Shown: piece by piece, positions 2,850-45,821 of the stretch
How the letters are laid out: the number at the start of each line of letters is the position of its first letter
How positions within the stretch are numbered: position 1 is the stretch's first letter
The notes under the pieces: model-generated
Told to the model about the DNA's origin: nothing
Seen by the model: the letters and a program-made list of their open reading frames with translations, nothing else
Database searches by the model: none
Assembly: GCA_010909165.1 (NCBI GenBank)
Contig: MU008165.1
Span: forward strand, 124,001-188,000
DNA: 64,000 nt
Source: Anthoceros angustus
Taxonomy: Eukaryota; Plantae; Anthocerotophyta
Reading direction: 5' to 3'
Program-made: the position numbers and the translations under genes

Positions 2850-4133
2850 GAGCCCGCAGTCCACACTTGGTATCTCAGCCTGCCATTGGCCTCCGTTACA
2901 GTAGGTTGGTCACTTTCCAGCATCCGATCTCTCTCGAGTGGGAATCAGAGTCTCGAGAAACATTGCAGCAGTAGGCTGTATAGCAGAAATTGAGGTATCT
3001 CGACAGGTCATATCTGATACAAGCTCTGTTATGTGTTGCAGTTTTAGGGAGAGGAATTCCAGGCGTCCGTTGACCTACCTAGAAAGAGTTTCTAGTTTGT
3101 CGGTTACTTCAACATATCTTTCTGCAGATTGCGTGCCCTGTCTGGCAAGGATCCTGAGCAGAATTTCTTCAGTTCTACCTAGGCGGTCATTCATGACTCT
3201 GTATACACCGACAGTTTCTGGTAACCGAGGGGAATTGTCTGGGAATAACTCTGCAATTTCCTCCACGTTACTTTCAATGTACACCCGTGATGGGTTGTTG
3301 CTAAATGGTCGGGTATAAGCAGCAACTCTTTGTTGCTATGAGTTCCTTGAATTGGTCTGACGCGTGGGTCTACTATGTGCAGGCTGATTCACACGCTCAG
3401 CGTGACCTCGTCGCCGCGAAGGCATTTTTCTGGAATTATGAATTTAGAAATTGCATTCATAATTCTTCTAGAATTCTTGTAATTATAAACTGATGATTGT
3501 GTGCAGGAGGGGTAACATGGGCTTCAGCAGACTCCCCAATTATCCTAGGATAATTGTGAGATTTTGCTTAAGTCCTGGTTGCTCTTCCAAAACACCGATA
3601 TCAGGTTTTAATATTAATATACTTCAATTCCTCTTGCGTATGCGCAACGGAACTTTGTAAGATCTTAGATTGAAATCGAGACTTGTCCAAACTCTCTGAT
3701 TTAATCATTGTGACGATACAATGGCAACATCATCGTAGCTACCATTTAGCGTGAGATGATACCAGTCCATTAACCAGGCTAAAACATCAATAGCCTTGAT
3801 CCACAAGCGTAGAGGAATATCAAATTCACTCCATAGCGTGCCGAGATATGAGTATCTTAGGGTTCCTCCGGATCTGGTCATCGTCTAAAGGTGATCATCA
3901 AGAGCAGAGCTCTGATACCATGTTCGGATAGAACCATGGCCAGAGTGCAAGAGAAAAACGAAGCACGATCTAATTAAGAGCATAAACAATGAATACAAAA
4001 ATAGTGTCTTAGTTGGTCTTATGTACTAAACATCTAGGCAACCCTTCGCTAAGTGACCTTTGGATAAATAACCTTGTCATAATTAACTCAGCAAGTTAAC
4101 CCTAAGCGAGGTAAGATTATTTTAACCGTAACA
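2850..4133 (-). mobile_element. Second LTR retrotransposon 5' end: LTR 3921-4133, PBS 3909-3920, decayed internal leader/gag
   Basis: Perfect gctctgatacca (PBS reverse complement) followed by tgttcgg...ccgtaaca imperfect inverted termini. Left boundary approximate. Confidence 0.65.
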
Positions 4134-4290
4134 CACACCTTGTCTCCTACTTGAAACTCTGCCTCTTGCCTCTGCCTGTCAGCAAACTTCTTTTGCCTGT
4201 TCTGAGTCTTGGCCAATATCTTCTTAGCAACTTCATGCCTGGCCCTTAACTGCTCAATGAATTCACATGGTTCTCTTGCTGCTGTCATTC
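4134..4290 (-). mobile_element. Ty3/gypsy integrase C-terminal remnant
   Basis: AKKILAKTQNRQKKFADRQRQEAEFQVGDKV is the typical post-integrase-core motif. It is cut by the LTR ending at 4133. Confidence 0.75.
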
Positions 4291-4320
4291 CTCCGAGTGA
4301 CTAGAGAGTGCACAAGATAG

Positions 4321-4908
4321 AGTAACGGCACTGGTGAAACAAGATAGAAAGATGAAAAGTTGAAAGAGGTAAAAAGCTAAGTTAGTAGCTGCCCTGTTAA
4401 GAAGATGCATGTGTTGCATGCTTCATGCAATCTCTTGTTAGAGAGGGCTACACACAAATGAAGAGCTGCCTAGAGGACTCTTAGTGATCGGTGGTGCATG
4501 AAGAATCCCTAGATTTGATTTGCCTAGTTGAGGTCAGCGGGATATATAAGGGCGAGCAAAGGCTTTGAGGAACAAGTTACTCACTCTTTGAGAGAGCAGC
4601 AAGTGTCTTGCAAGCCTGTGTTGAGAGAGGCGGGAGAGCTAGCTAGTGAGCTTGTCATGGAATCAATGCCGGTGGCCAGTTGGGCGTAGATAGCCGATTC
4701 CATTGTTGTATTCTTGCAATAAAGAGCGAGACCGAGGAGGTGACTGCGAGCCGTCAATGGACGGTGTATGAGCCTAGTCTTTGTGTTGTGAGGTTGAGAG
4801 CGCTAAGAAACGTGCAAGTCTCTTGTGGATTGAATTGGTGAGGTCCTAGACCACTGGGAAGCCAGCACTTGTCGCTTCCTTACTAGCTGCGCAGTGAGGG
4901 GTGTTACT
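4321..4908 (+). mobile_element. LTR, left arm of inverted pair
   Basis: AGTAAC...GTTACT termini, TATA (tatataa near 4543), aataaa near 4718, followed by ttag and PBS TGGTATCAGAG at 4913. Confidence 0.8.
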
Positions 4909-4916
4909 TTAGTGGT

Positions 4917-5044
4917 ATCAGAGTGGCGCAGCGGAAGCGTGGTAGTCCATAACCCACAAGTTCCAAGATCGAAACCTGGCGCAGCGGAAGCATGGTGGGC
5001 CCATAATCCATAGGTCCCAGGATCGAAACCTGGCTCTGATACCA
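4917..5044 (+). pseudogene. tRNA-iMet (CAT) retro-copy, partially duplicated, with encoded CCA
   Basis: Matches plant initiator tRNA (ATCAGAGTGGCGCAGCGGAAGCGTGG...GATCGAAACCTGGCTCTGATA) plus CCA. Copies at 4917-4980 and 4977-5044 are joined at TGGC and carry several C>T/G>A changes. Confidence 0.92.
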
Positions 5045-5048
5045 CTAA

Positions 5049-5628
5049 AGTAACACCCCTCACTGCGCAACTAGTAAGGAAGCGACAAGTGCTGGCTTCC
5101 CAACGGTCTAGGATCTCGCCAATTCACTCCACAAGAGACTTGCACGATTCTCAGCGCTCTCAACCTCACAACATGCTAGGCTCCAAGTAGCCCGTCACGA
5201 CGACTCGTAGTCCACCTCCTCGAGGTCTTGCTCTTTGTGCAAGAATACAACAATGGAATCGGCTATCTACGCCCAATCAAGGCTCGGCATTGATTCCATG
5301 ACAAGCTCACTAGCTAGCTCTCCCGACTCTCTCAACAAGGCTTACTGCCTCTGCCTCTCAAAGAGTGAGTAACTTGTTCCTCAAAGCCTTTGCTCGGCCC
5401 TTATATATCCCGCACTGACCTCAACTAGGCAGTTAAATCTAGAGTTCTTACACCAGCGATCACTAAGAGTCCTCTCTAGCTCTTCATTTTGTGGGTAACA
5501 GTCCTCTCTAACAAGAGATTGCATGAAGCATGCAACACATGCATTTTTCTTAATAGGGCAGCTACTAACTTAACTTTTTACCTCTTACAACTTTTACCTT
5601 TCTATCTTATTTCACCAGTCCCGTAACC
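5049..5628 (-). mobile_element. LTR, right arm of inverted pair
   Basis: Reverse complement of 4321-4908 along its whole length, with scattered mismatches and indels. Confidence 0.85.
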
Positions 5629-7339
5629 TCCAATTATGGGGCAAGTTTTTCTAATGAGACGTCCTAAGATAATAATTATATAGACAATTTAATTGAAGTA
5701 TTTCTTTCCTTTGAGTTGTATGGTACAACTTGATTGGAGTCGGTGCTTCGATGTATTTGGCACCATTTTTTTGACAGTTAAAAGAACAATAATTATGCTT
5801 AAATTCATCTTGTACCACCAGAGTAAGCAGTCTAATTTGTTCACAAATATATAAGACCATAAATTCATCATTTTGACTATAATCTGAAGCATTTCTATGA
5901 ATGCCCATTTGCATCCACAAAAAAGTATGTTCATTTTTGGCAAAGTTTTTGTTTTGGTCAATTATACCAATCAAATCATAAATAAATCACAGCTTGAAAT
6001 TTAAAGCTTTAAGAACAAATAAGACTAGATGGAAATCTAGTCTAAAAATCTACTTTAGCAACAAGAAACGGAACAATATTAAGGCTGATGTATGATTAAA
6101 TGAAGTCAATGTGTCATTCAACATTACCCTTGATCCAATCTAAAACATCAGCAACATCTCCAATCAAATAGCCTTTGAATCTGGCGCAAGGTGCTAGAGG
6201 GGAGAAGGCCACTAATGTCCCTTCGGGCACAGGAGTATCCGCCTATGCGAGCAGCATAAGGCCAATCCTAAAAAACTTCCTCCAAACCAATCTAGAAACC
6301 TGATTAGCCAAATTCAGCAAAAGCTCGGCATCCTCGAGGAGCAGTCCTAGAGAAGGCGTGAGCTTGAGGAGGCTGGATTGTGGCGGGGCAATGAATCAAA
6401 CGGGCCTCCATTTAGGGACTCCCTATATCGGCACGAGCACACATAGCAATCACCTCGCGGTATGCCGAAGTAGAAATCTCATACTTGTTCTTGTGTTCTT
6501 TTACATTAAATCATTTTGTTTCACTAATATGTCGTTTAAACATCGTTGTGTGTCAGAAAGTCATTGTCAAGTAATGCTCTCACTTACTAAATTTAGAAAA
6601 GGAAACACTTAATGGAACATCCGGTGCCAAAGCAAATGGTAATTAAACCTTTTCGCAGCATCTATATTGATGTCGCAATTGTTTCCGTTAATATTTTGTC
6701 AATTTCGCAATTGTTTTTGTTGACATCTCTATGGATTTAGCAATTATTTCCATTGATATCTTTACATCCAAGCTTTGATGGGGCAGAGATTAGGGACCAT
6801 CTCGTGGGTACAACTTGCCTAATAACAGCCGTAGCGTTGGTGACCTTCTTGAGAAAAATGGAGGACAACATCTAAGCAACGCTTGGTAAAAGCGATGAAC
6901 CAATAAAGTCTGACTAAGTAACGATGGCAGTCAATCTCGTAGCGTGATCAGTGAAGGTTGCAGAGCCTACATCAATAGAAACCATAGCAAATCAATAAGA
7001 ATGACTTTAGAGGATTTTAGACAAACTAAAGACTATGTCGTTGGCCTTACCATGTGCTGCTTTGGCAACAGGCATGCCATCATATATTGTTTTGACTATC
7101 TTTTCCATGTTTAGGAAGTGAGATATTATCTATGGATTGTGCAGAACAATAACTAAAATATTAAAGTACAACATAAAATTAATGCAATGTTCTACACAGT
7201 CTACCGGTCATATCTCACTTATAAAATTGAATATAATTGAGAATGAGGATGCACATATTGAATTCAATTCGAATGTTGATTTTGAATTTTTTTGAATTTC
7301 TTTTAGGGTATGAACTTGCACTACATATATGTAAGAAGT

Positions 7340-8639: not shown

Positions 8640-10484
8640 TTACTGAAACTGCTCAGGAACCACCGGGTAAGATGCACAAGTAGCCACACCTGCCAAAGCC
8701 AAGACAGAGAGACGTCAGGCTTTTGGGAGAACAGGAATACGGGAACGCCGGAGCTTTGATTTCTACTTACCACACATGTTCTTCCCAAGCTCAATGTTGA
8801 AATAGCCATTTTCTCCCCAGTCGGCACCCCACGAGTTCTTGACGACCCAGTAAGGAAGGCCTTCCGGATTGATTTCATAGCCGACAGCCAACACGGCGTG
8901 ATTCACAGTCTGAATGGAAGAAACCGCAAGTCAGATCGAGAGTCATCTCACAAAAAGATACGGACAACTCTCAGGAGGAACTGGACAAACCTGAGGCCCG
9001 TCATGGCAGAGAGGGCTCGTGAAGATTCCGCTGGTGTAATGCTGGAATAAGTTGATGACTTCGAAAGCAATACTCACAGGCCGCTGTGTTGCAACTGCGT
9101 GAAGCAATTCATCTTCGGCGCCCTGCACAGATAGAATCGCACACGAATGTTATCCTGCATTGCTTCTCAGCTGAAGAAGCATCTCTAAACGATCAACTCG
9201 TACCAAAGTGATGTTAACCACGTCGAAGACTGTGGCCCCGACGCTGTTACTGTTGAACTTGCACACCCCGTCTTTGGCAGTGTAAGGGTAGGATTCTTCA
9301 GTGTCAAGGCCGCCGTTGTACTTGATGTACTCAAATGCCTGAGAAGGAAGGCCACCGTTGCAGCCAAAGTTGTTGAAACCACCAGCACAGTCAACCAGCT
9401 GCTGTTCCGAGAGAAGCACCAGTTCTCCGGTAGCCTGGGCGTGGGCAGACTCCAACGCACCAGTGGTACTGCGTACAATCAGGCGGTCAGCAAGACCTGC
9501 GACCTCACAAAACTCATCCTACAACAGCTTCCGCAGAGCCGTACCTGAATGTCCAGCAAGAACCGCAGCTTGCCTGATTCTTCACAGCGCTGACAATGCC
9601 AGCCTCCCTCCAATCTTTCTGTACACGTCACAGCATCCACACAAAATAAGCTCGTGGACAAAGGCTTCAAAGTCACAAGCGCCGTGTCCCGCACCTACCT
9701 GCAGCGGCAATTGCACACTGGTCATCTTGTGTGAACCCTTGGTGGCTGAGCAGTCCTGCTCAGCTCCGAGATAGTGCTTCTTGAATTCGTCAAAAGTCAA
9801 ATCCGTGAACTCTGATGAGCAAACAGTAGAACCTCAATCAGCCGCTCTATCGCAGTTCCAACCTCCAGGAAACCAGAACATTGCGAATACTTACTGTTGA
9901 CACCGAGCTTGTATGGAAGATTCTGTTTGTTAGTGCTTTCAATGAGCTCCACATTCTTCACAAAGACGCCAAACCGTTCTTTCAAGTGCTCCACTGATTC
10001 GTAGGTCTTGCCATGTCTGCATCCAAGGAAAAGCTTAAGAACTCCAAGACACAACACCTTCTCAACCAGATCACCTCCACGCCGACCAGTACAGAGCACA
10101 TCGAACTCTACGCTTCCTAAACCAAAACATCTAATTTCCCTTGCCATTGCAAGGCGAGCTCGATACAGAGCAGCCACGGCTAATCCAGGTAGCGGTTTTC
10201 AGGCCACGGCAAAACAATCACAGACAAGATGAAACAAGCACCCGGAGGCAATGCTGTGAGTCCTCAACCGGCACCAATTCCGCTCACCTAAGCATGAAAT
10301 CACCGAACTGCAGGGCATGGACTCCGCGGCCAAGAATCTCGTGGACACGCTCCACGGTGAGCGCGTCCTTAACCCGCCTCTCAGTGACCATGGCGATTTC
10401 CAACGGCTCCAGGAGCCTGGCCGCAGCGCCAGCCACGAGCAAAGCACAAACCAAAATCAAGGCGAGGGCGGACGAGGACGCCAT
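8640..10484 (-). CDS. Papain-family cysteine protease, aleurain/cathepsin H-like (multi-exon)
   Basis: Signal peptide [17 protein letters not shown]29 propeptide ([13 protein letters not shown]), catalytic [62 protein letters not shown], end [12 protein letters not shown]. Confidence 0.95.
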
Positions 10485-15508: not shown

Positions 15509-16161
15509 TCAAACAATCACGGACCCGTGTTCCTGGCGGCAATCCACAAGAAATGCAGGTTCGCCAGCTCCCAGAGGATCAAGAATCAGCTCAAGTGCTG
15601 TCACCAGCAGCCAATTCTGGGCCAAGAATTGGTAGAGCCAGTCCTCGACAGCACGGGAAGCACCAATTTCTCTCTGGCATGCAACAATTACTCCAGCCAA
15701 ATTCCATGCATGCAACGCCACTTCTGGTTCAGCAAATGGGTCTCTGCTGGCGTCTGCACTGGGCTGGAAGACTGCAATAAATGCTGCTGCAGAAACAGAG
15801 CTCTGTGAAACGGGAAGAAGCCGGCAGGCAGTGTGCGAAAGCCCGGCGGCCGGACTACGGTTGCAAAAGAGATGGAAATTTGGGGAGTGACGACTGCACA
15901 CAACTCCACAGGCACTTGACAGCGGCTCCTGTCGAGTCCAGTTAGCTAAATGGGGCTCTAACCTAGGATTTTCAGCAGAGATAATTTCCAGAGAGTGATG
16001 TGTCTGTACGTGCTTGAGATGTGTACAGTTTGCAGTGACAGAGAAACCGGCGTTACGTCCCGTAGCCATCTTTCAGTCCTTCAGCACATCAGGCTCATCA
16101 ATGTTCTGACGTCGACCTATGCATTCTGCCTCGACACGAACCAAGGTTGTATCTAAGTACA
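15509..16161 (-). pseudogene. Fragment of an unidentified gene (also at about 25260-25896)
   Basis: Exon-like ORFs (MYLDTT...DEPDVLKDWKMATGRNAGFSVTANCTHL; VALHAWNLAGVIVACQREIGASRAV) are conserved between both copies and truncated at the duplication edge. No family recognised. Confidence 0.4.
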
Positions 16162-16389
16162 TCTCTATGTAGAATACAGCTCACGCTTATGAGTTGAGCT
16201 CAGATCAAGCACTCACTTATGACCTACCAGACCCTGGACAGATAATGGGCCTCTAATACTTTGTTGGAACAGAATCCCTTGGTGCGCCAGAATGGAAATG
16301 GAAGCGTCAAAGTGAACCTGACTTGAGTTCATAACGTTCATCATCCGTCATCCGCTTGCAAGCCCTGGCCACAGCTTGGAAGACCGACT

Positions 16390-16800
16390 ACGATGGTGCA
16401 GCCTCGGTGAAGTTGATGCTGCAGAAGCAGCAGCTGTGGGAACGGCTCCAGGTATTTGGTAAACCCGTCCTCTCCTCAGGATCTCGGTGACCATCCAGTG
16501 CTTCCTCTTGCTCAAGGGTCGTGTGGATTTGATCGGTACCTGCCAACACAAATGCGGTAGGTCATCAAGGCTTGTTACATAATCCGTAAGGTCAGTCACA
16601 CAGGCGAGTCTTAAGCCAAGTGCGGCAGAGCAGGGCAGGACAGCATAGGATAGGACAGACTCGTCGCCGAGCATTTTCCTCGTCGTGTGGCATGAACTTG
16701 CTGGTTTTTCTCACCACCTTGTGTCAGATAAACGCTCCACGGCCACCACCACCGACTTCTGCATCTTACTCGACAGCACCTTCCCCACAGTCGACTTCGT
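16390..16800 (-). pseudogene. uS17 pseudogene
   Basis: Copy of 26104-26557 with ATG>ACG and deletions/frameshift in exon 1. Confidence 0.85.
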
Positions 16801-18010: not shown

Positions 18011-18192
18011 GCCGAATCTAGGGGTGGTGCCCTTTGGTGAACCATCACATGACCCGTGGTTCATGTTTCATGGTCATGTCAATGAACGTGGGTTGAGTTA
18101 GCAGGTTTGTCACATGGTAGGTTGGTCACACACACCATATAACGTAGCACACCGAGGCAAAAACCGATGGTGCGGGTCTCCCCTCTTTCCTC

Positions 18193-18508
18193 GGTGGTGG
18201 CTTTCTTCTTACAGCGGGTATCCATCGCCCTGCAGAGCTGAGCGCCGGCCAACACTATTTACATGATGGCAGGTGGTGGCTTTCTTTCGACAGCGGGTAT
18301 CCATCGCCCTGCAGAGCTGAGCGCCGGCCAACACTATTTACATAATGGTAGGTGGTGGCTTTCTTTCGACAGTGGGTATCCATCGTCCTACAGAGCTGAG
18401 CGCCGGCCAACACTATTTACATGATGGCAAGTGGTGGCTTTCTTTCGACAGCGGGTATCCATTGCCCTGCAGAGCTGAGCGCCGACCAACACTATTTACA
18501 TGATGGCA
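18193..18508. repeat. Tandem repeat, about 79-bp unit x4
   Basis: Unit ggtggtggctttctttcgacagcgggtatccatcgccctgcagagctgagcgccggccaacactatttacatgatggca. Confidence 0.95.
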
Positions 18509-18514
18509 ACGAGC

Positions 18515-18665
18515 GCAGGAGACGTGGCTCATCGGCACCAATTGTAGATAAGCCTTTCCTCATCGCAGGAGACGTGGCTCATCGGCACCAATTGTAGGTA
18601 GGCCTTTCCTCATGGCAGGAGACATGGCTCATCGACACCAATTGTAGGTAGGCCTTTCCTCATCT
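18515..18665. repeat. Tandem repeat, about 50-bp unit x3
   Basis: Unit gcaggagacgtggctcatcggcaccaattgtaggtaggcctttcctcat. Confidence 0.9.
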
Positions 18666-25240: not shown

Positions 25241-26103
25241 CCTGTCTTTGTCGGGCACATTGATCAAACAATCACGGACCCGTGTTCCTGGCGGCAATCC
25301 ACAAGAAATGCAGGTTCGCCAGCTCCCAGAAGAACAACGATCAGCCAGGTACTATCAACAGAAGCCAAGTTTGGGCCAAGCATTGGGAGAGCCAGTTCCT
25401 GACAGCACGGGAAGCACCAATTTCTCTCTGGCATGCAACAACTACTCTAGCCAAATTCCATCCATGCAATGCCGCTTCTGGTTCATGGGTCTCTGCTGCC
25501 GTCTGCGCTGGGCTGAAGACAGCAATAAATGCTGCTGCAGAAACAGAGCTCTGAGAAACGGGAAGAAGCCGGCAGCCCAGGGGCCGGACTACGGTTGCAC
25601 AAGAGATGGAAATTTGGGGAGTGACGACTGCAAACAACTCCACAGGCACTTGGCAGCGGCTCCTGTCGATTCCAATAAGCTAAATGGGGCTCTTACCTAG
25701 GATTTCCAGCAGAGATAATTTCCAGAGAGTGATGTGTCTGGACGTCCCTGAGATGTGTACAGTTTGCAGTGACAGAGAAACCGGCGTTACGTCCCGTAGC
25801 CATCTTCCAGTCCTTCAGCACATCAGGCTCATCAATGTTCTGAGGTCGACCTATGCATTCTGCCTCGACACGAACCGAGGTTGTATCTAGGTACATCTCT
25901 GTGTAGAATTCAGCTCAGGCTTTTGAGTTGAGCTCAGATCAATCACTCACTTAGCACCTACCAAACCCTGGACAGATGATGGGTCTCTATTACTTTGCTG
26001 AAACAGAATCCCTTGGCGCGCCAGAATGCAAAAGGAAGCGTCAGAGTGAACCTGACTTGAGTTCATAACGTGCAAGCCATGGCCACAGTTGTTGGAAGAC
26101 CGA

Positions 26104-26557
26104 CTACGATGGTGCAGCCTTCGCCGAGCTTTCAGCGTCCGGTGAAGATGATGCTGCAGAAGCAGCAGCTGTGGGAACAGCTCCAGGCATTTGATAAACC
26201 CGTCCTCTCCTCAGGATCTCGGTGACCATCCAGTGCTTCCTCTTGCTCAAGGGTCGTGTGGATTTGATCCGGACCTGCCAACACAAATGCGGTAGGTCAT
26301 CAGGGCTTGTTACATAATCCGTAAGGTCAGTCACACAGGCGAGTGTTAAGCCAAGTGCGGCAGAGCAGAGCAGGGCAGGACAGGATAAGACAGACCTCAT
26401 CGCCGATGTTGCACGCGTTTTCCTCGTCGTGTGCCATGAACTTGCTGGTTTTCCTCACCACCTTGTGGTAGATAGGGTGCTCGGTGAGGCGCTCCACGGC
26501 GACCACCACGGACTTCTGCATCTTATTCGACAGCACCTTCCCCACAGCCGACTTCAT
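26104..26557 (-). CDS. rps17: Organellar (probably mitochondrial) ribosomal protein uS17, 2 exons (26557-26396, 26274-26104)
   Basis: MKSAVGKVLSNKMQKSVVVAVER..HPIYHKVVRKTSKFMAHDEEN.CNIGDEVRIKSTRPLSKRKHW is the bacterial-type S17 signature. GT-AG intron. Confidence 0.9.
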
Positions 26558-29499: not shown

Positions 29500-32400
29500 A
29501 TATGTTTGGGTCGCAGAGTTATAGAACTCGGCCTTTCAGCAGTGTTTCACGGCCAGTTGTGGCGGCTGCGGCAGGCGGCAGGCAAACGAAAGGATTCAGC
29601 TGAAACAATCGATGAGATGACGGTAGCATGCCACTCCCTGTTCCGAAATCTGCAACCCTCCCTGTCGGAAGAGACGCTGGATGTCCTGGAAAAGCAGGGA
29701 TTTGTGAGCGCCACCCCGGTGCAGGCCGCCACAATTCCTCTGCTCTGCAGCTACAAAGATGTGGCTGTGGATGCAGCCACCGGCTCGGGCAAGACGCTTG
29801 CCTTCCTGGTTCCTCTTGTGGAGATTCTGCGCAGGCTGAGCAAGCCTCTCGGCTTCCATGAGGTGCGCCGGCTGGCTTCTTTGGTGTGGGATGGTGGTGT
29901 GGGTCGGGGTTCGTGTGTGTGCTGATTTGTGGGGAACACGGTTCAGGTTGGCGCTGTGATTATATCGCCCACTCGGGAGCTGGCGTCGCAAATTTTTCAC
30001 GTGGCGGAGCCGCTGGTGGCAACGCTGCCTGGCATCGCAGTAGGCTTGCTTGTGGGCGGCACGGACGTGGCGGCGGACTTGGCAAGACTGAAGCAGAATG
30101 GTGCCAACCTGCTGGTTGGCACGCCTGGACGGCTGCATGACATTATTGAGCGGTCCTCTTTTTTGGATTTCCGGCAGTTGGAGGTAGTTGCTAGGGGGAT
30201 GGTGGTGGGTTATCTGGGGTTCGGTGTTTGTGTTTGAGTGAGGGATTAAGACTGGTTGGACTGCTGGTTGTGGTGTAGGTGCTTGTCCTGGATGAGGCTG
30301 ACAGGCTGCTGGACATGGGGTTTCAACGCCAAATTACTGCTATCATCGCTGAGCTGCCAAAGCAGCGTAGGACAGGCCTCTTTTCGGCTACTCAAACTCG
30401 GGAAGTGCAAGAGCTGGCCAAAGCTGGGTTGCGGAATCCGGTGCAGTGGAGGTGAAAGTTGAAGCGAAAGGAGGTGCTGGGGCAGTAGGTGGTACAGACA
30501 AGCCATCCAAGACACCATCCAGCTTAAGCATTCAGGTATTTTTCTCGGAATAAGGAAGGGTTTCGCGTGCTTGAATGTTTTTGTTTGCAGTCTTTCGTTC
30601 TGTCTTGCTGTTTGCAGAAGGGTAGCCTATGTTTCCTGCTTCATCCACCTTGTGGCATGTGCAGTACTTGACTTGTGAGGCGGATGAGAAGCCGTCACAG
30701 CTGCTGGAGTTTGTAAAGCAGCACCCGTCAAGCAAGATGATCATGTAAGCTACTGCGTGGTGTTGGGGACAGTGGGCCTTATTTTTCCAATTGAGCAGCT
30801 GCTGGTGGATTATTTTTCTCCTGCTGCTGCATGCTCAAGCCTCGGAAATTGCGCCAGATATTTCATGACTTGCAATTGTGTGGACTTCTGGGGAACTGTC
30901 CTACGCCAAGCAGGGCTTTTGAAGAATGTTCCCTCAGTATTTCTACATGGCAAGATGAAGCAGGTAGGTTCTGAAGCTTTCAGGCTACCACCCTGTCTTG
31001 CTTGTGGGGTTTAGGGACAGCGAGCTGAGGCTTGGTCTCTTGCAGTCTGTGCGGGAGAAAGCTCTAGCAACCTTCACTGAGATGCAGAGTGGCATTCTGT
31101 GCTGCACAGACGTAGCTGCCTGAGGGCTCATACCTGGTGTGGACTGGATTATACAGGTAGGAGTCAACAACTTGATGGTAACGATTGGTCATTTGAATTG
31201 GTATGCCATTTTGCTTTTCTTTGTCAGGTTGAATTGTTTTTTACAGTTTTGATATGTTTGGGTCGCAGAGTTATAGAACTCGGCCTTTCAGCAGTGTTTC
31301 ACGGCCAGTTGTGGCGGCTGCGGCAGGCGGCAGGCAAACGAAAGGATTCAGCTGAAACAATCGATGAGATGACGGTAGCATGCCACTCCCTGTTCCGAAA
31401 TCTGCAACCCTCCCTGTCGGAAGAGACGCTGGATGTCCTGGAAAAGCAGGGATTTGTGAGCGCCACCCCGGTGCAGGCCGCCACAATTCCTCTGCTCTGC
31501 AGCTACAAAGATGTGGCTGTGGATGCAGCCACCGGCTCGGGCAAGACGCTTGCCTTCCTGGTTCCTCTTGTGGAGATTCTGCGCAGGCTGAGCAAGCCTC
31601 TCGGCTTCCATGAGGTGCGCCGGCTGGCTTCTTTGGTGTGGGATGGTGTGGGTCGGGGTTCGTGTGTGTGCTGATTTGTGGGGAACACGGTTCAGGTTGG
31701 CGCTGTGATTATATCGCCCACTCGGGAGCTGGCGTCGCAAATTTTTCACGTGGCGGAGCCGCTGGTGGCAACGCTGCCTGGCATCGCAGGCTTGCTTGTG
31801 GGCGGCACGGACGTGGCGGCGGACTTGGCAAGACTGAAGAATGGTGCCAACCTGCTGGTTGGCACGCCTGGACGGCTGCATGACATTATTGAGCGGTCCT
31901 CTTTTTGGATTTCCGGCAGTTGGAGGTAGTTGCTAGGGGGATGGTGGTGGGTTATCTGGGGTTCGGTGTTTGTGTTTGAGTGAGGGATTAAGACTGGTTG
32001 GACTGCTGGTTGTGGTGTAGGTGCTTGTCCTGGATGAGGCTGACAGGCTGCTGGACATGGGGTTTCAACGCCAAATTACTGCTATCATCGCTGAGCTGCC
32101 AAAGCAGCGTAGGACAGGCCTCTTTTCGGCTACTCAAACTCGGGAAGTGCAAGAGCTGGCCAAAGCTGGGTTGCGGAATCCGGTGCGAGTGGAGGTGAAA
32201 GTTGAAGCGAAAGGAGGTGCTGGGGCAGTAGGTGGTACAGACAAGCCATCCAAGACACCATCCAGCTTAAGCATTCAGGTATTTTTCTCGGAATAAGGAA
32301 GGGTTTCGCGTGCTTGAATGTTTTTGTTTGCAGTCTTTCGTTCTGTCTTGCTGTTTGCAGAAGGGGTAGCCTATGTTTCCTGCTTCATCCACCTTGTGGC

Positions 32401-32999
32401 ATGTGCAGTACTTGACTTGTGAGGCGGATGAGAAGCCGTCACAGCTGCTGGAGTTTGTAAAGCAGCACCCGTCAAGCAAGATGATCATGTAAGCTACTGC
32501 GTGGTGTTGGGGACAGTGGGCCTTATTTTTCCAATTGAGCAGCTGCTGGTGGATTATTTTTCTCCTGCTGCTGCATGCTCAAGCCTCGGAAATTGCGCCA
32601 GATATTTCATGACTTGCAATTGTGTGGACTTCTGGGGAACTGTCCTACGCCAAGCAGGGCTTTTGAAGAATGTTCCCTCAGTATTTCTACATGGCAAGAT
32701 GAAGCAGGTAGGTTCTGAAGCTTTCAGGCTACCACCCTGTCTTGCTTTGTGGGGTTTAGGGACAGCGAGCTGAGGCTTGGTCTCTTGCAGTCTGTGCGGG
32801 AGAAAGCTCTAGCAACCTTCACTGAGATGCAGAGTGGCATTCTGTGCTGCACAGACGTAGCTGCCCGAGGGCTCGACATACCTGGTGTGGACTGGATTAT
32901 ACAGGTAGGAGTCAACAACTTGATGGTAACGATTGGTCATTTGAATTGGTATGCCATTTTTGCTTTTCTTTGTCAGGTTGAATTGTTTTTTTTACAGTT
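29500..32999 (+). repeat. About 1752-bp near-identical tandem duplication of the helicase 5' half
   Basis: 29500-31250 versus 31251-32999 differ only by 1-3 nt indels in the stretches compared. Confidence 0.95.
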
Positions 33000-43115: not shown

Positions 43116-45821
43116 ATGGCTGACTCAAGGTTAACAATAACTGTGGGAAGAGGTCCTGCGAGGTGTAGCACGTTGGCAGCCCGATTCTATAGGGTTGTGG
43201 TGGCTGGAACCGTGACCGAGCTATGCCATCAGGGCCATCTCGCTGAGGCTGTTGAGGCTTTGGGAATTCTGGTGCAGACAGACTGTTGCATCTCCAAGTC
43301 TTTGTTGTATACTGTCCTGAAGAAATGTGCAGTGGAGAAGGATCTTGTTCTGGGTCGCCGCGTCCATGGGTTAACGGTGAAAAAAGGGTGTCAATCGGAC
43401 ACTTTCCTGTGCAACCACATCCTGCGTATGTATGCTTCTCATGGCAGGTTGCAAGACGCGATGAATGTGTTCACCGTGGTTGCCCAACCAGATGCCTTCA
43501 TGTGGTCTTCCATCATTTCTGCTCATGTTAGACATGGGCAAGATAGGCGGGCCATAGAACTTTATCATCGGATGCGAATGTCCAGTGTGCAGCCAGATGG
43601 CCATGTATTTGTGGCAGCACTTCAGGCTTGTGCAAGGGGAGCAGACTTGACGTCTGGGCAGCAGGTGCATGCTGATGTCTTGAACAGTGGGGTTGAGCCT
43701 CATTTATGTGTCTGTAATGGCTTGGTGGATATGTATGCAAAGTGTGGCAGCTTGGAAAAGGCTCAAAGAGTGTTTGACGGACTTGGTCAGAAGGATGTGG
43801 TGACCTGGAATACCATGATAGCAGGGTATTCTCAGCAGGGCATGGGTCAGGAAGCCCTCCATCTGTACAGCGTGATGCAAGAAGACGGCAAGGCTGTACC
43901 TGATTCTGTGACATTTGCCTGCCTCCTGCAGGCATGTGCAAGTGTGGGAGCCGGAGCTTTGGAGAAGGGAAAGGAGCTTCATGCACAACTTGCAGAAGGA
44001 GGACATCAAGCCGATGTGTTTGTAGCAAGCAATTTGGTGAACATGTATGCGAAATGTGGCTGCTTGGAAGAGGCCCAGAGAGTGCATGATGAACTTGGCC
44101 AGAAAGCCGTGGTGACATGGAATGCCTTGATAGCGGGATATGCCCACAAGGGCATGGGCCAGGAAGCCCTTCGTGTGTACAGTGCTATGGAAGAGGGAGG
44201 TATCGCTGTACCTGATCCTGTAACATTTGTGTGCCTCCTGCAGGCATGTGCAAGCGTGGGCTTCACAGCTTTGGAGAAGGGAAGGCAGCTTCATGTGCAG
44301 ATTAGAGACCGAGGGTACCAAGCTAATGTGTTTGTAGCCAACAGTTTGGTAAACATGTACGCAAAGTGTGGCAGCCTCGAAGATGCGCAGAGAGAATTCG
44401 ACAGACTTGGTCAGAAAGATGTGGTGACTTGGAATGCCATGATAGCAGGGTATTCCCAGCATGGCATGGGCCAGGAAGCCCTTCATCTTCACAGTGCTAT
44501 GCAAGAGGGAGGGATTACTGTACCTGATTCTGTGACATTTGTGTGCCTCTTGCAGGCCTGTGCAAGTGTGGGCGTCCCAGCTTTGGAGACGGGGAAGCAG
44601 CTCCATGCGCAGATTAGAGGAGGAGGATATCAGGCTGATGTGTTTGTGGCCAGCAGTTTGGTAAACATGTATGCAAAGTGTGGCAGTCTAGAGGATGCTC
44701 AGAGAGTGTTTAACAAACTTGGTGAAAAGGATGCTGTGACATGGAATGCTATGATAGGAGGGTATTCCCAGGAGGGCATGGGCCAGGAAGCCCTTCTTGT
44801 TTACAGTGCTATGGTAGAAGAGGGCATCACTGCACCTAATTCCGTGACATTTGTGTGCCTCCTGCAGGCATGTGCAAATGTGGCAGCTTTGAGTTTGGGA
44901 AGGCAGCTACACGCCCAGATTGAAGAACAAGGGCTTCAAGCTGACTTTCTTTTAGCTGGCAGTTTGATCAACATGTATGGAAAATCAGGCAGCATGGCTG
45001 ACGCACAGCAGTTGTTTGATGCATTGCCCAAAAGAGACGTTGTGGCCTGGAGTGCATTGATCGCAGGCTACACCTGTCAAGGAGACACTGAATCAGTCTT
45101 TGACTTGGTTAAGACAATGACAACGGAAGGTATACCACCAGTGGGCATCACATTCCTTAGTGTGCTAACGGTATGCAGTCATGCAGGTCTAGTGACCAAG
45201 GGGAAAGAGTACTTTGAGGCTATGAGCAGAGAGTATGGCATCACTCCCACCGTGGAGCACTACACATGTATGGTAGATCTCCTGGGCCGTGCTGGACAAC
45301 TGGATGAGGCACTGGCTTTGGTGAGGGCAATGCCTGCACTTCCTAATGCTGCAGTTTGGCACACTCTGTTGGGTGCTTGTCAAAAGTGGAGCAATTTGGA
45401 AGTTGGACGCCATGCTTTTGAAGAAGCAGTGGAGCTGGACACGAAAAATGCCGCAGCATATGTGTTGATGTTGAACATATACACCAGTGTCCAGATGTGG
45501 GAGCAGGCAGAGCAGATCCAGGCCAGGAGAATAAAGATCAGGGCATGGAAGCAGCCAGGGCAAAGCTGGTGGACCGACATGGATGGCCTTGTGCATAGTT
45601 TTTCGGTTGGGGATAGCAGACATCGAGAGTCAAGCAAGGTTCAACTAGCCAGTTCCCTGCAAAGTGAAGAAAGATATGTTCCAAACGAGGACTCTCCGCT
45701 GGCACACACATTCGATGACAATTCCATACTAGCAAATCAAGGAGCTATGAACTTAACATACTTCCAGAACACATCGGTACTTCATACCGATCCGGCATCA
45801 AGTGTTATTTGTTGCGTGTAG
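43116..45821 (+). CDS. PLS-class PPR protein with E/E+ domains, WW-type PG box, no intact DYW deaminase
   Basis: Intronless ORF with repeated LVNMYAKCGSLEDA..DVVTWNAMIAGY, HYTCMVDLLGRAG, VWHTLLGAC, KQPGQSWWTD. No HxE or CxxC downstream. Confidence 0.95.
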   Translation: MADSRLTITVGRGPARCSTLAARFYRVVVAGTVTELCHQGHLAEAVEALGILVQTDCCISKSLLYTVLKKCAVEKDLVLGRRVHGLTVKKGCQSDTFLCNHILRMYASHGRLQDAMNVFTVVAQPDAFMWSSIISAHVRHGQDRRAIELYHRMRMSSVQPDGHVFVAALQACARGADLTSGQQVHADVLNSGVEPHLCVCNGLVDMYAKCGSLEKAQRVFDGLGQKDVVTWNTMIAGYSQQGMGQEALHLYSVMQEDGKAVPDSVTFACLLQACASVGAGALEKGKELHAQLAEGGHQADVFVASNLVNMYAKCGCLEEAQRVHDELGQKAVVTWNALIAGYAHKGMGQEALRVYSAMEEGGIAVPDPVTFVCLLQACASVGFTALEKGRQLHVQIRDRGYQANVFVANSLVNMYAKCGSLEDAQREFDRLGQKDVVTWNAMIAGYSQHGMGQEALHLHSAMQEGGITVPDSVTFVCLLQACASVGVPALETGKQLHAQIRGGGYQADVFVASSLVNMYAKCGSLEDAQRVFNKLGEKDAVTWNAMIGGYSQEGMGQEALLVYSAMVEEGITAPNSVTFVCLLQACANVAALSLGRQLHAQIEEQGLQADFLLAGSLINMYGKSGSMADAQQLFDALPKRDVVAWSALIAGYTCQGDTESVFDLVKTMTTEGIPPVGITFLSVLTVCSHAGLVTKGKEYFEAMSREYGITPTVEHYTCMVDLLGRAGQLDEALALVRAMPALPNAAVWHTLLGACQKWSNLEVGRHAFEEAVELDTKNAAAYVLMLNIYTSVQMWEQAEQIQARRIKIRAWKQPGQSWWTDMDGLVHSFSVGDSRHRESSKVQLASSLQSEERYVPNEDSPLAHTFDDNSILANQGAMNLTYFQNTSVLHTDPASSVICCV

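What the first reader, a model, noticed from the sequence alone, without database searches (positions are those of the whole stretch)
4321..5628. Head-to-head LTRs bridged by a DNA copy of their primer tRNA-iMet
Seen: LTR(+), ttag, TGGT, ATCAGAG..tRNA-iMet body..CTCTGATACCA, ctaa, LTR(-). The left PBS continues directly into the tRNA 5' end because both contain ATCAGAG (acceptor stem). The right half is the layout of a primer tRNA extended into minus-strand DNA. CCA is not normally encoded in eukaryotic tRNA genes, so the copy came from mature RNA. Established: RT normally copies only the 3' end of the primer, stopping by m1A58. Inference: read-through plus a template switch produced a 1.3-kb palindrome with two U3 outer ends. 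It could be a one-off aberrant product or a non-autonomous fold-back family. A transcript would form a roughly 580-bp hairpin (potential siRNA source).
Basis: partly seen in the sequence, partly recalled or inferred. Interest (0 to 1): 0.8.

Follow-up and report, generated by a model that had tools for sequence, protein, structure and literature searches.

The report
Inverted LTR pair bridged by primer tRNA
Two inverted copies of one retrotransposon LTR are joined by a DNA copy (about 1.7 units) of the initiator methionine tRNA that primes their replication, most likely an old reverse-transcription accident that entered a plant genome.

Summary
Window 4321-5629 reads LTR(+) 4321-4908, ttag, PBS 4913-4923, tRNA-derived centre 4917-5044, ctaa, LTR(-) 5049-5629. 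One correction: the centre is not a single tRNA. It holds about 1.7 tandem tRNA-iMet bodies joined at a shared TGGC (tRNA positions 8-11 and 63-66).

The arms differ at 12.3% of sites plus 15 indels, so this is not an assembly fold-back. The two tRNA bodies differ from each other by the same amount, and each difference is one hit on an intact cloverleaf. Arms and tRNA copies therefore look the same age.

Best reading (about 0.6): plus-strand strong-stop DNA read through the whole primer tRNA, slipped once at TGGC, and ran off the tRNA 5' end. Its new 3' end, CTCTGAT, then paired with ATCAGAG in its own PBS and copied back to the U3 start. Their CCA argument is weak, because CCA also belongs to the PBS complement.

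No target-site duplication is present. I could reach no other copy, although an unchecked note from this scan (s1-300156) reports a similar fold-back elsewhere in this genome. I found no published description. It is a new variant of a known kind, of moderate to high interest.

The parts
4321..4908 (+). Left LTR arm, U3 outermost. Termini AG...CT with a 6-nt terminal inverted repeat AGTAAC/GTTACT; TATATAA at 4543; AATAAA at 4718.
4909..4912 (+). 4-nt spacer ttag between LTR and PBS, mirrored by ctaa at 5045-5048.
4913..4923 (+). Primer-binding site TGGTATCAGAG, complementary to the last 11 nt of tRNA-iMet. Its last 7 nt (4917-4923) double as tRNA positions 1-7.
4924..4980 (+). tRNA-iMet body copy 1 (about tRNA positions 8-66). 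It carries 5 substitutions and a 1-nt deletion relative to the state that keeps base pairing.
4977..5034 (+). tRNA-iMet body copy 2 (tRNA positions 8-66), with 3 substitutions. It overlaps copy 1 in the 4-nt junction TGGC (4977-4980).
5034..5044 (+). tRNA 3' acceptor strand plus ACCA (CTCTGATACCA), which is also the complement of the right arm's PBS.
5045..5048 (+). Spacer ctaa, the reverse complement of ttag.
5049..5629 (-). Right LTR arm, inverted, U3 outermost. TATATAA at 5407 on the minus strand; the AATAAA equivalent is mutated.

Best explanation
This is a fossil of an aberrant reverse-transcription product of an LTR retrotransposon primed by tRNA-iMet. It is read here on the window's minus strand, where the right arm is the sense LTR.

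(a) Plus-strand strong-stop DNA (U3-R-U5-ttag-PBS) did not stop 18 nt into the primer tRNA at m1A58. It went on copying the tRNA.
(b) Near tRNA positions 8-11 (U-G-G-C; G9 and G10 are m1G and m2G in yeast and human initiator tRNA) the nascent end re-paired with the identical UGGC at positions 63-66. This was probably on a second tRNA-iMet molecule. The body was copied again, giving the 1.7-unit centre.
(c) Synthesis ran off the tRNA's processed 5' end, leaving a 3' end ...CTCTGAT.
(d) The acceptor stem is self-complementary, so that 3' end is the complement of ATCAGAG inside the strand's own PBS (or that of a sibling strand). It paired there and primed synthesis back through TGGT, ttag, U5, R and U3. 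Synthesis stopped at the template's 5' end, which is the U3 start set by the polypurine-tract primer. The result is an LTR-PBS-tRNA-PBS'-LTR' fold-back with two exact U3 ends.
(e) The product entered the chromosome downstream of a cysteine-protease gene. It has since decayed by about 6-7% per arm.

The anatomy, the equal age of the parts, the microhomology junctions and the exact ends are shown. Steps (a) to (e) as events are inferred, as are the role of tRNA modifications and the route of insertion.
For: Layout and exact junctions.

Arms homologous over their full length and ending at the same boundary.

LTR polarity from the inward-pointing TATA boxes and the poly(A) signal.

Centre is tRNA-Met(CAT) with CCA once the duplicated segment is skipped. 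Read directly from the sequence, the initiator hallmarks are present: A1:U72, a GGG:CCC anticodon stem recoverable from the two copies, and A54 and A60 in GATCGAAAC.

Equal age: arms show 72 substitutions in 584 columns and the two tRNA bodies 8 in 56 (Fisher p=0.67). At all six paired columns where the bodies differ, exactly one copy keeps the Watson-Crick pair. So both descend from one intact tRNA and the arms need not have differed at birth.

The duplication junction lies in a 4-nt TGGC shared by tRNA positions 8-11 and 63-66.

The 7-bp ATCAGAG/CTCTGAT closing stem appears in both the minimum-energy and the centroid DNA fold of the centre.

Literature: m1A58 is the plus-strand strong-stop signal, and without it synthesis continues into the tRNA (PMC8599865). 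m1G9 and m2G10 are present in yeast and human tRNAiMet, and loss of the position-9 methyl is described as a missing RT-block (bioRxiv 10.1101/2022.12.16.520695 and PMC7293042). TAR-dependent self-priming of minus-strand strong-stop DNA is known; I saw this only as a reference title, Guo et al. 1997, listed in PMC10986323.
Against: There is no target-site duplication (gatag versus ccaat). So integrase-mediated entry is not shown, and the way a single-stranded fold-back became a 1.3-kb duplex insert is unexplained.

No modification footprint (misincorporation) is seen at positions 9, 10, 26, 37 or 58 in either copy. This fits a hypomodified tRNA but is also what a DNA template would give.

Arm divergence is uneven. 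It reaches 24.7% in 4721-4820 against 6-15% elsewhere. That could mean two different templates, or just indel-driven misalignment.

The termini are the unusual AG...CT, and no other family member was available to confirm the LTR boundaries.

Plant (and specifically this species') tRNA-iMet modifications were not checked. The reference plant tRNA-iMet sequence rests on my memory plus the base-pairing argument.
Confidence: 0.6

Rival explanations
1. It is a member of a fold-back family. LTR-tRNA-LTR' units either multiply as such, or one active LTR family makes them recurrently and integrase inserts them through two U3 ends.
For: An unchecked first-reader note in this scan (s1-300156) reports, on another piece of the same genome, a 1267-nt 'inverted-LTR fold-back element with tRNA-iMet PBS, 5-bp TSD and AG..CT termini'. 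The size and termini match this one. 1309 nt minus one 54-nt body is about 1255 nt.
Against: I saw only the title of that note and could not read its sequence. An inverted second LTR gives no sense 3' R for the first strand transfer, so canonical replication of the fold-back form is not possible. Recurrent de novo formation is compatible with my best explanation rather than opposed to it. No TSD is present here. There is no other copy in the window, no hit to a conserved arm 24-mer in metagenome contigs, and no relatives of the ORF across the centre.
Confidence: 0.17
2. It arose by DNA-level rearrangement in the chromosome. An integrated element whose PBS had been extended by tRNA read-through suffered a break. 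The strand folded back at the ATCAGAG/CTCTGAT repeat and was filled in by host repair synthesis. Alternatively, loose cDNA was captured at a break.
For: The lack of a TSD suits break repair. Fold-back inverted insertions at breaks are documented in yeast (titles and abstracts listed). From memory, capture of Ty1 cDNA at breaks is also known.
Against: A chromosomal fold-back normally produces a hairpin-capped end and large inverted duplications. It would not produce a compact insert whose two arms both stop exactly at an LTR boundary with unrelated unique flanks. The capture variant still needs the same aberrant cDNA as the best explanation.
Confidence: 0.12
3. Two independent LTR insertions or solo LTRs flank a pre-existing tRNA-iMet gene or tandem gene pair.
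For: tRNA genes are known landing zones for some retroelements. Other notes in this scan report LINEs inside tRNA genes of this genome (unchecked).
Against: LTR elements insert by their LTR ends, not by their PBS. Here each arm is followed by its spacer and PBS, and the PBS is fused in register with the acceptor stem on both sides. There is no separate TSD around either arm. The tRNA ends in CCA. The second body lacks positions 1-7 and the first lacks 67-76, which is not how tandem genes look. Arms and bodies are equally old.
Confidence: 0.03
4. It is an assembly or library fold-back artefact (chimeric palindromic read).
For: Palindromes are a known long-read library artefact.
Against: Artefactual fold-backs have identical arms. 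These arms differ by 72 substitutions and 15 indels, and the two tRNA bodies differ at 9 positions. The centre has a biologically specific structure.
Confidence: 0.02

Closest known systems
Plus-strand strong-stop DNA of retroviruses and LTR retrotransposons, and its read-through when tRNA m1A58 is missing
   Same: It has U3-R-U5-PBS followed by a copy of the primer tRNA. The literature says that without the m1A58 stop, synthesis continues into the tRNA (PMC8599865).
   Different: Here the whole tRNA was copied (1.7 times) and the product folded back and became chromosomal. The cited work describes such products as dead ends that cannot be integrated.
Self-priming (snap-back) of strong-stop DNA in vitro, such as TAR-dependent self-priming of HIV-1 minus-strand strong-stop DNA
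   Same: A 3' end pairs with an upstream complementary segment of the same strand, and RT copies the strand back on itself.
   Different: The known cases involve the minus strand and the TAR hairpin, are seen in vitro, and are suppressed by nucleocapsid. Here it would be the plus strand, with the tRNA acceptor-stem complementarity as the hinge, preserved in a genome.
Complex LTR retrotransposon structures made by template switching (multi-LTR, chimeric and tandem elements in plants)
   Same: They are products of RT template switches among co-packaged templates. Switching at short homologies is well established (the sugar beet preprint 10.64898/2026.03.01.708851 says so in general terms).
   Different: Those structures have direct LTRs and element-derived internal parts. 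None that I found has inverted LTRs with the primer tRNA as the only internal sequence.
Strong-stop-DNA hypothesis for the origin of tRNA-derived SINEs (Ohshima, Okada and colleagues, 1993; recalled from memory, not retrieved)
   Same: The right half, read on the plus strand, is a tRNA with internal A and B boxes followed directly by antisense U5-R-U3. This is the 'primer tRNA plus strong-stop DNA' layout that the hypothesis requires to become genomic DNA.
   Different: There is no LINE-type tail, no poly(A) or simple-repeat end, no TSD and no evidence of amplification. The tRNA is initiator Met, not Lys.
DIRS-like retroelements and Foldback/MITE DNA transposons (elements with inverted terminal repeats)
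   Same: They have long inverted terminal repeats and a short centre.
   Different: The arms here have LTR anatomy (TATA, poly(A) signal, PBS). There is no tyrosine recombinase, RT or transposase, no internal complementary region and no TSD.

Membership tests
Canonical LTR retrotransposon / TRIM | Two LTRs in direct orientation | tested here: not met
   The arms are inverted.
Canonical LTR retrotransposon / TRIM | tRNA-complementary PBS just inside the LTR | tested here: met
   TGGTATCAGAG lies 4 nt inside each arm.
Canonical LTR retrotransposon / TRIM | Polypurine tract before the 3' LTR, and a 4-6-bp target-site duplication | tested here: not met
   There is no internal PPT. The flanks are gatag versus ccaat. 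The 26 nt outside the left arm are only mildly purine-rich (19/26, top 4% of windows).
Canonical LTR retrotransposon / TRIM | TG...CA LTR termini | tested here: not met
   The termini read AG...CT with an AGTAAC/GTTACT inverted repeat. The boundaries were not confirmed on other copies.
Functional tRNA-iMet gene | Single intact cloverleaf detected by tRNA finders, with no encoded CCA | tested here: not met
   ARAGORN finds 0 genes. Rfam scores 20 bits against a gathering score of 29. The bodies are duplicated and mutated, and CCA is present.
tRNA-derived SINE | tRNA head plus LINE-related or simple-repeat tail, TSD, many copies | tested here: not met
   The tRNA-like head is present, but the tail is an antisense LTR. 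There is no TSD and no other copy in the window or the scanned collections.
DIRS-like element | Inverted repeats plus internal RT/RNase H, tyrosine recombinase and an internal complementary region | tested here: not met
   The centre is 128 nt of tRNA sequence only. ORFs in the element are at most 86 aa and have no relatives.
Foldback / MITE DNA transposon | Terminal inverted repeats with TSD and family-level amplification | tested here: not met
   There is no TSD. The arms carry LTR promoter and poly(A) landmarks and a PBS. Family size is not testable with these tools.
Assembly fold-back artefact | Arms identical or nearly so | tested here: not met
   The arms show 12.3% substitutions plus 15 indels.
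Read-through plus-strand strong-stop DNA, self-primed (the proposed mechanism class) | On one strand, in order: a sense LTR, the PBS, the complement of the full tRNA ending at tRNA position 1, and an antisense LTR ending at the U3 start | tested here: met
   The minus strand reads exactly this.
Read-through plus-strand strong-stop DNA, self-primed (the proposed mechanism class) | Direct observation of such cDNA in virus-like particles, and dependence on tRNA m1A58 status | not testable with these tools
   This needs wet-lab cDNA sequencing.

The most novel reading that the evidence does not exclude
Complete read-through of the primer tRNA inevitably recreates a PBS-complementary 3' end. Such inserts would be ready-made long hairpin and convergent-promoter loci aimed at the parent family. 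Their tRNA-plus-antisense-LTR half would be a concrete starting point for tRNA-headed retroposons.
Probability: 0.2. Interest if true: 0.8.

Novelty: new variant of a known kind. Interest (0 to 1): 0.6.

Why it matters
Textbook reverse transcription has the plus strand stop 18 nt into the primer tRNA. What happens in vivo when it does not stop is known mostly from in-vitro work and mutant cells, where the product is described as non-integrable.

This locus would be physical evidence of three things in a land plant. The whole primer tRNA can be copied. The acceptor-stem complementarity can then turn the strand back on its own PBS. And the resulting palindrome can become a heritable part of the genome.

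It also suggests a simple way in which a retrotransposon family could generate a long inverted repeat against itself, as a potential RNAi trigger. Finally, it gives a real example of the 'tRNA joined to antisense LTR' layout once proposed as the origin of tRNA-derived SINEs. If it is a single accident, it is a neat curiosity. If it is recurrent, it is a by-product class I could not find described.

Tried and rejected
- Other copies in the window: blastn of the arm found only the two arms. A tRNA T-arm motif occurs only in the centre.
- Public collections: a 24-mer identical in both arms gave 0 hits in metagenome contigs. The diagnostic PBS-into-tRNA-sense 22-mer gave 0 hits in viral contigs and 0 in prokaryotic genomes.
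- The same 22-mer gave 1 metagenome contig, L001. L001 has no inverted arms and looks like a different situation.
- The collections hold little plant DNA, so these blanks say little.
- Protein word-search with the 86-aa ORF across the centre found no relatives.
- Exact look-ups of two neighbouring ORFs found nothing on record. So there was no independent assembly and no empty site.
- Scan notes by sequence and by relatives were blank.
- I tested whether the palindrome sits inside one older gypsy element. It does not. The left flank has an integrase-tail-like ORF, with no Pfam hit and only a weak atlas hint of SH3_Tf2-1. The right flank has no pol remnants.
- PPT-like tract outside the left arm only: weak, not used as evidence.
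- Literature: ten searches found no description of an inverted LTR pair bridged by the primer tRNA. Subscription-journal papers are not covered.

Full report
**What is there**

Window 4321-5629 is a 1309-nt near-palindrome. On the plus strand it reads as follows:
- a 588-nt LTR-like arm (4321-4908);
- a 4-nt spacer ttag;
- the 11-nt primer-binding site TGGTATCAGAG (4913-4923);
- a tRNA-derived centre running to CTCTGATACCA (5034-5044);
- the mirrored spacer ctaa;
- the same arm inverted (5049-5629).

The repeat finder reports ten collinear inverted blocks, the inner 140 nt being 94% complementary. blastn aligns the arms over 617 nt at 86.4% identity, E=0, and finds no third copy in the 64-kb window. 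A MAFFT alignment gives 584 aligned columns, 72 substitutions (44 transitions, 28 transversions) and 15 indel events. The p-distance is 0.123 and the K2P distance 0.136. GC skew mirrors across the centre: +0.258 in 4501-5000 and -0.258 in 5001-5500.

**LTR polarity and termini**

Each arm has a TATATAA box pointing toward the centre, at 4543 on plus and 5407 on minus. The left arm keeps an AATAAA at 4718.

The left arm begins AGTAAC and ends GTTACT. That is a 6-nt terminal inverted repeat with unusual AG...CT termini.

**The centre**

The centre is not a single tRNA copy. There are two tandem bodies, 4924-4980 and 4977-5034, with a period of 53-54 nt. This is why ARAGORN sees no tRNA and Rfam's tRNA model reaches only 20 bits against a gathering score of 29.

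If the duplicated segment is skipped in silico (4917-4923 joined to 4977-5044), ARAGORN calls a 75-nt tRNA-Met(CAT) that includes CCA. The initiator hallmarks can be read directly:
- an A1:U72 pair;
- a GGG:CCC anticodon stem, recoverable from the two copies;
- A54 and A60 in GATCGAAAC.

From memory, the inferred original sequence equals the plant cytosolic initiator tRNA. I could not retrieve a full reference sequence. Only a 19-nt wheat small RNA matching its 5' end turned up.

The junction between the two bodies lies in a TGGC that the tRNA carries twice, at positions 8-11 and 63-66.

**Age test**

The two tRNA bodies differ by 8 substitutions and one 1-nt indel in 57 columns. This is indistinguishable from the arms' 72 in 584 (Fisher p=0.67).

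At all six base-paired columns where the bodies differ, exactly one copy keeps the Watson-Crick pair. So every difference is a single later hit on an intact cloverleaf: five substitutions and the deletion in copy 1, three substitutions in copy 2.

That is about 8% change per copy, and the arms show about 6-7% per arm. The arms therefore need not have differed when the tRNA was copied. Arms, tRNA copy and the internal duplication look like products of one event.

With an assumed rate of 1e-8 per site per year, which has not been measured for this lineage, the event is several million years old. The divergence also rules out an assembly fold-back, which would have identical arms.

**Mechanism (inference)**

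Read on the minus strand, the order is:
- sense LTR (the right arm);
- ttag;
- PBS;
- the complement of the tRNA from its 3' end inward;
- the complement of the tRNA again, from position 66 to position 1;
- ACCA;
- ctaa;
- antisense LTR.

The first four items are plus-strand strong-stop DNA that failed to stop. m1A58 is the normal stop, and without it synthesis continues into the tRNA (PMC8599865).

The restart at TGGC coincides with G9 and G10. These are m1G and m2G in yeast and human initiator tRNA, and loss of the position-9 methyl is described as removing an RT block. A stall there, followed by re-pairing on the identical UGGC of a second tRNA-iMet, would give the 1.7-unit centre. I did not verify these modifications for plants.

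After run-off at the tRNA 5' end, the nascent 3' end is ...CTCTGAT. The acceptor stem is self-complementary, so this end is the complement of ATCAGAG inside the PBS. The DNA fold of the centre closes with exactly that 7-bp stem in both the minimum-energy and the centroid structure. Its overall z-score is unremarkable, as expected for a mutated sequence.

Extension from that stem copies TGGT, ttag, U5, R and U3. It ends where the template ends, at the U3 start set by the polypurine-tract primer. This explains why both arms stop at the same LTR boundary.

It does not by itself explain the exact outer end, because minus-strand DNA continues past U3.

The template for the fold-back could also be a sibling plus strand, which would allow the arms to differ slightly at birth. 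Arm divergence is uneven: 24.7% in 4721-4820 against 6-15% elsewhere. That stretch is indel-rich, so I cannot tell misalignment from a real mosaic.

The ACCA at 5041-5044 is the complement of the TGGT in the right arm's own PBS. It therefore does not independently show a mature-RNA template. The better arguments are these:
- the copy spans the whole tRNA;
- it ends at the processed 5' end;
- it is fused in register with both PBSs.

LTR insertions into a tRNA gene could not produce these features, because elements insert by their LTR ends.

**Insertion**

There is no target-site duplication: gatag on the left, ccaat on the right, and no shared 4-mer in the adjacent 10 nt.

The flanks are unrelated.
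- On the left is a 187-bp stretch with a Ty3/gypsy integrase-tail-like ORF on the minus strand. It has no Pfam hit and only a weak atlas hint of SH3_Tf2-1. A different short LTR with its own iMet PBS follows it.
- On the right is AT-rich DNA downstream of a papain-type cysteine protease gene (Peptidase_C1 and I29 hits).

So entry by ordinary two-ended integration is not shown. Break capture, one-ended integration or a later flank deletion all remain possible. How a single-stranded fold-back became a duplex insert is not explained by anything I could test.

**One-off or family**

I could not reach any other DNA of this genome.
- Scans of public collections gave nothing useful. The single contig L001 carrying the PBS-into-tRNA junction has no inverted arms.
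- The ORF across the centre has no relatives.
- Neighbouring ORFs are not on record.

An unchecked first-reader note from this scan (s1-300156) describes a 1267-nt inverted-LTR fold-back elsewhere in this genome. It reportedly has a tRNA-iMet PBS, a 5-bp TSD and AG..CT termini. So the scan has flagged this kind of structure before, on other DNA of the same genome. If that note is right, such products form or spread more than once and can be inserted by integrase. The size difference is about one tRNA body.

Replication of the fold-back form by the canonical route is unlikely, because there is no sense 3' R for the first strand transfer. I therefore favour recurrent formation over a self-copying family, but this is open.

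**Transcript hairpin**

The whole element folds as one long imperfect hairpin, with a minimum free energy of -998.5 kcal/mol. That applies to a read-in transcript. From the LTR's own predicted start, about 30 nt after the TATA box, only R-U5 would pair, roughly 350 bp at most. The two promoters are convergent. Small-RNA production is untested.

**Comparison and novelty**

The ingredients are known: the m1A58 stop, read-through, self-priming of strong-stop DNA and RT template switching at microhomology. Ten full-text searches found no description of a genomic inverted LTR pair bridged by the full primer tRNA. The library lacks most subscription journals, so this is not proof of absence.

From memory, the right half has the 'primer tRNA plus strong-stop DNA' layout that Ohshima and Okada proposed as the origin of tRNA-derived SINEs. 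I could not retrieve that paper.

I class the finding as a new variant of a known kind. It fails the membership tests for a canonical LTR element or TRIM, a tRNA gene, a SINE, a DIRS-like element, a Foldback/MITE transposon and an assembly artefact.

**Verdict**

Confidence in the self-primed read-through model is about 0.6. Interest is 0.6.

Another agent's note calls this genome a probable hornwort (s1-680238). I did not test that.

Noticed in passing
window 3909-4133 (minus strand): A separate short LTR of about 213 nt (TGTTACGG...CCGAACA) is followed at once by a canonical PBS TGGTATCAGAGC at 3920-3909. No second copy of this LTR is in the window. A copia-type gag ORF (Pfam Retrotran_gag_2, E=1.6e-14) lies at 390-809 on the same strand, so the element may run off the window start.
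   Followed up: partly
window 4135-4291 (minus strand): A 52-aa open frame resembles the C-terminal tail of Ty3/gypsy integrases (..QNRQKKFADRQR..EFQVGDKV..). It has no Pfam hit and only a weak atlas look-alike with SH3_Tf2-1. This 187-bp fragment is wedged between the short LTR and the palindrome.
   Followed up: partly
window 9150-10177 (minus strand): Exons of a papain-family cysteine protease gene (Peptidase_C1 E=1.4e-22 at 9150-9455; propeptide inhibitor I29 E=4.6e-8 at 9797-10177). The palindrome lies about 3.5 kb downstream of it. The exons were not joined.
   Followed up: no
L001 1404-1436 and 2243-2254 (metagenome contig Ga0058702_10011941): TGGT plus tRNA-iMet positions 1 to about 26 in sense orientation is followed by an apparent TG...CA LTR of about 800 nt and a normal TGGTATCAGAGC PBS. 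There are no inverted arms. This is possibly an LTR element inserted into a tRNA-iMet gene that happens to be preceded by TGGT, or a remnant of a related read-through product.
   Followed up: partly
window 4721-4820 versus 5140-5235: A local hot spot of arm divergence (24.7% against 6-15% elsewhere) with several small indels lies just after the poly(A) signal, at the presumed R/U5 border. It is either misalignment or a sign that the two arms had different templates.
   Followed up: partly
window 4295-4320: The 26 nt just outside the left arm are 19/26 purines on the plus strand (top 4% of windows), while the right flank is not purine-rich. This would fit a copied polypurine-tract primer in the fold-back model, but it is too weak to count.
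   Followed up: yes
window 29500-32663: Segments that are 100% identical are repeated at a spacing of 1742-1752 nt (a recent tandem duplication or very young LTR pair). LTR-like direct repeats 95% identical lie 9.7 kb apart (15840-16660 and 25574-26395). Tandem arrays of 312 nt (43699-44934) and 79 nt (18114-18585) are also present.
   Followed up: no
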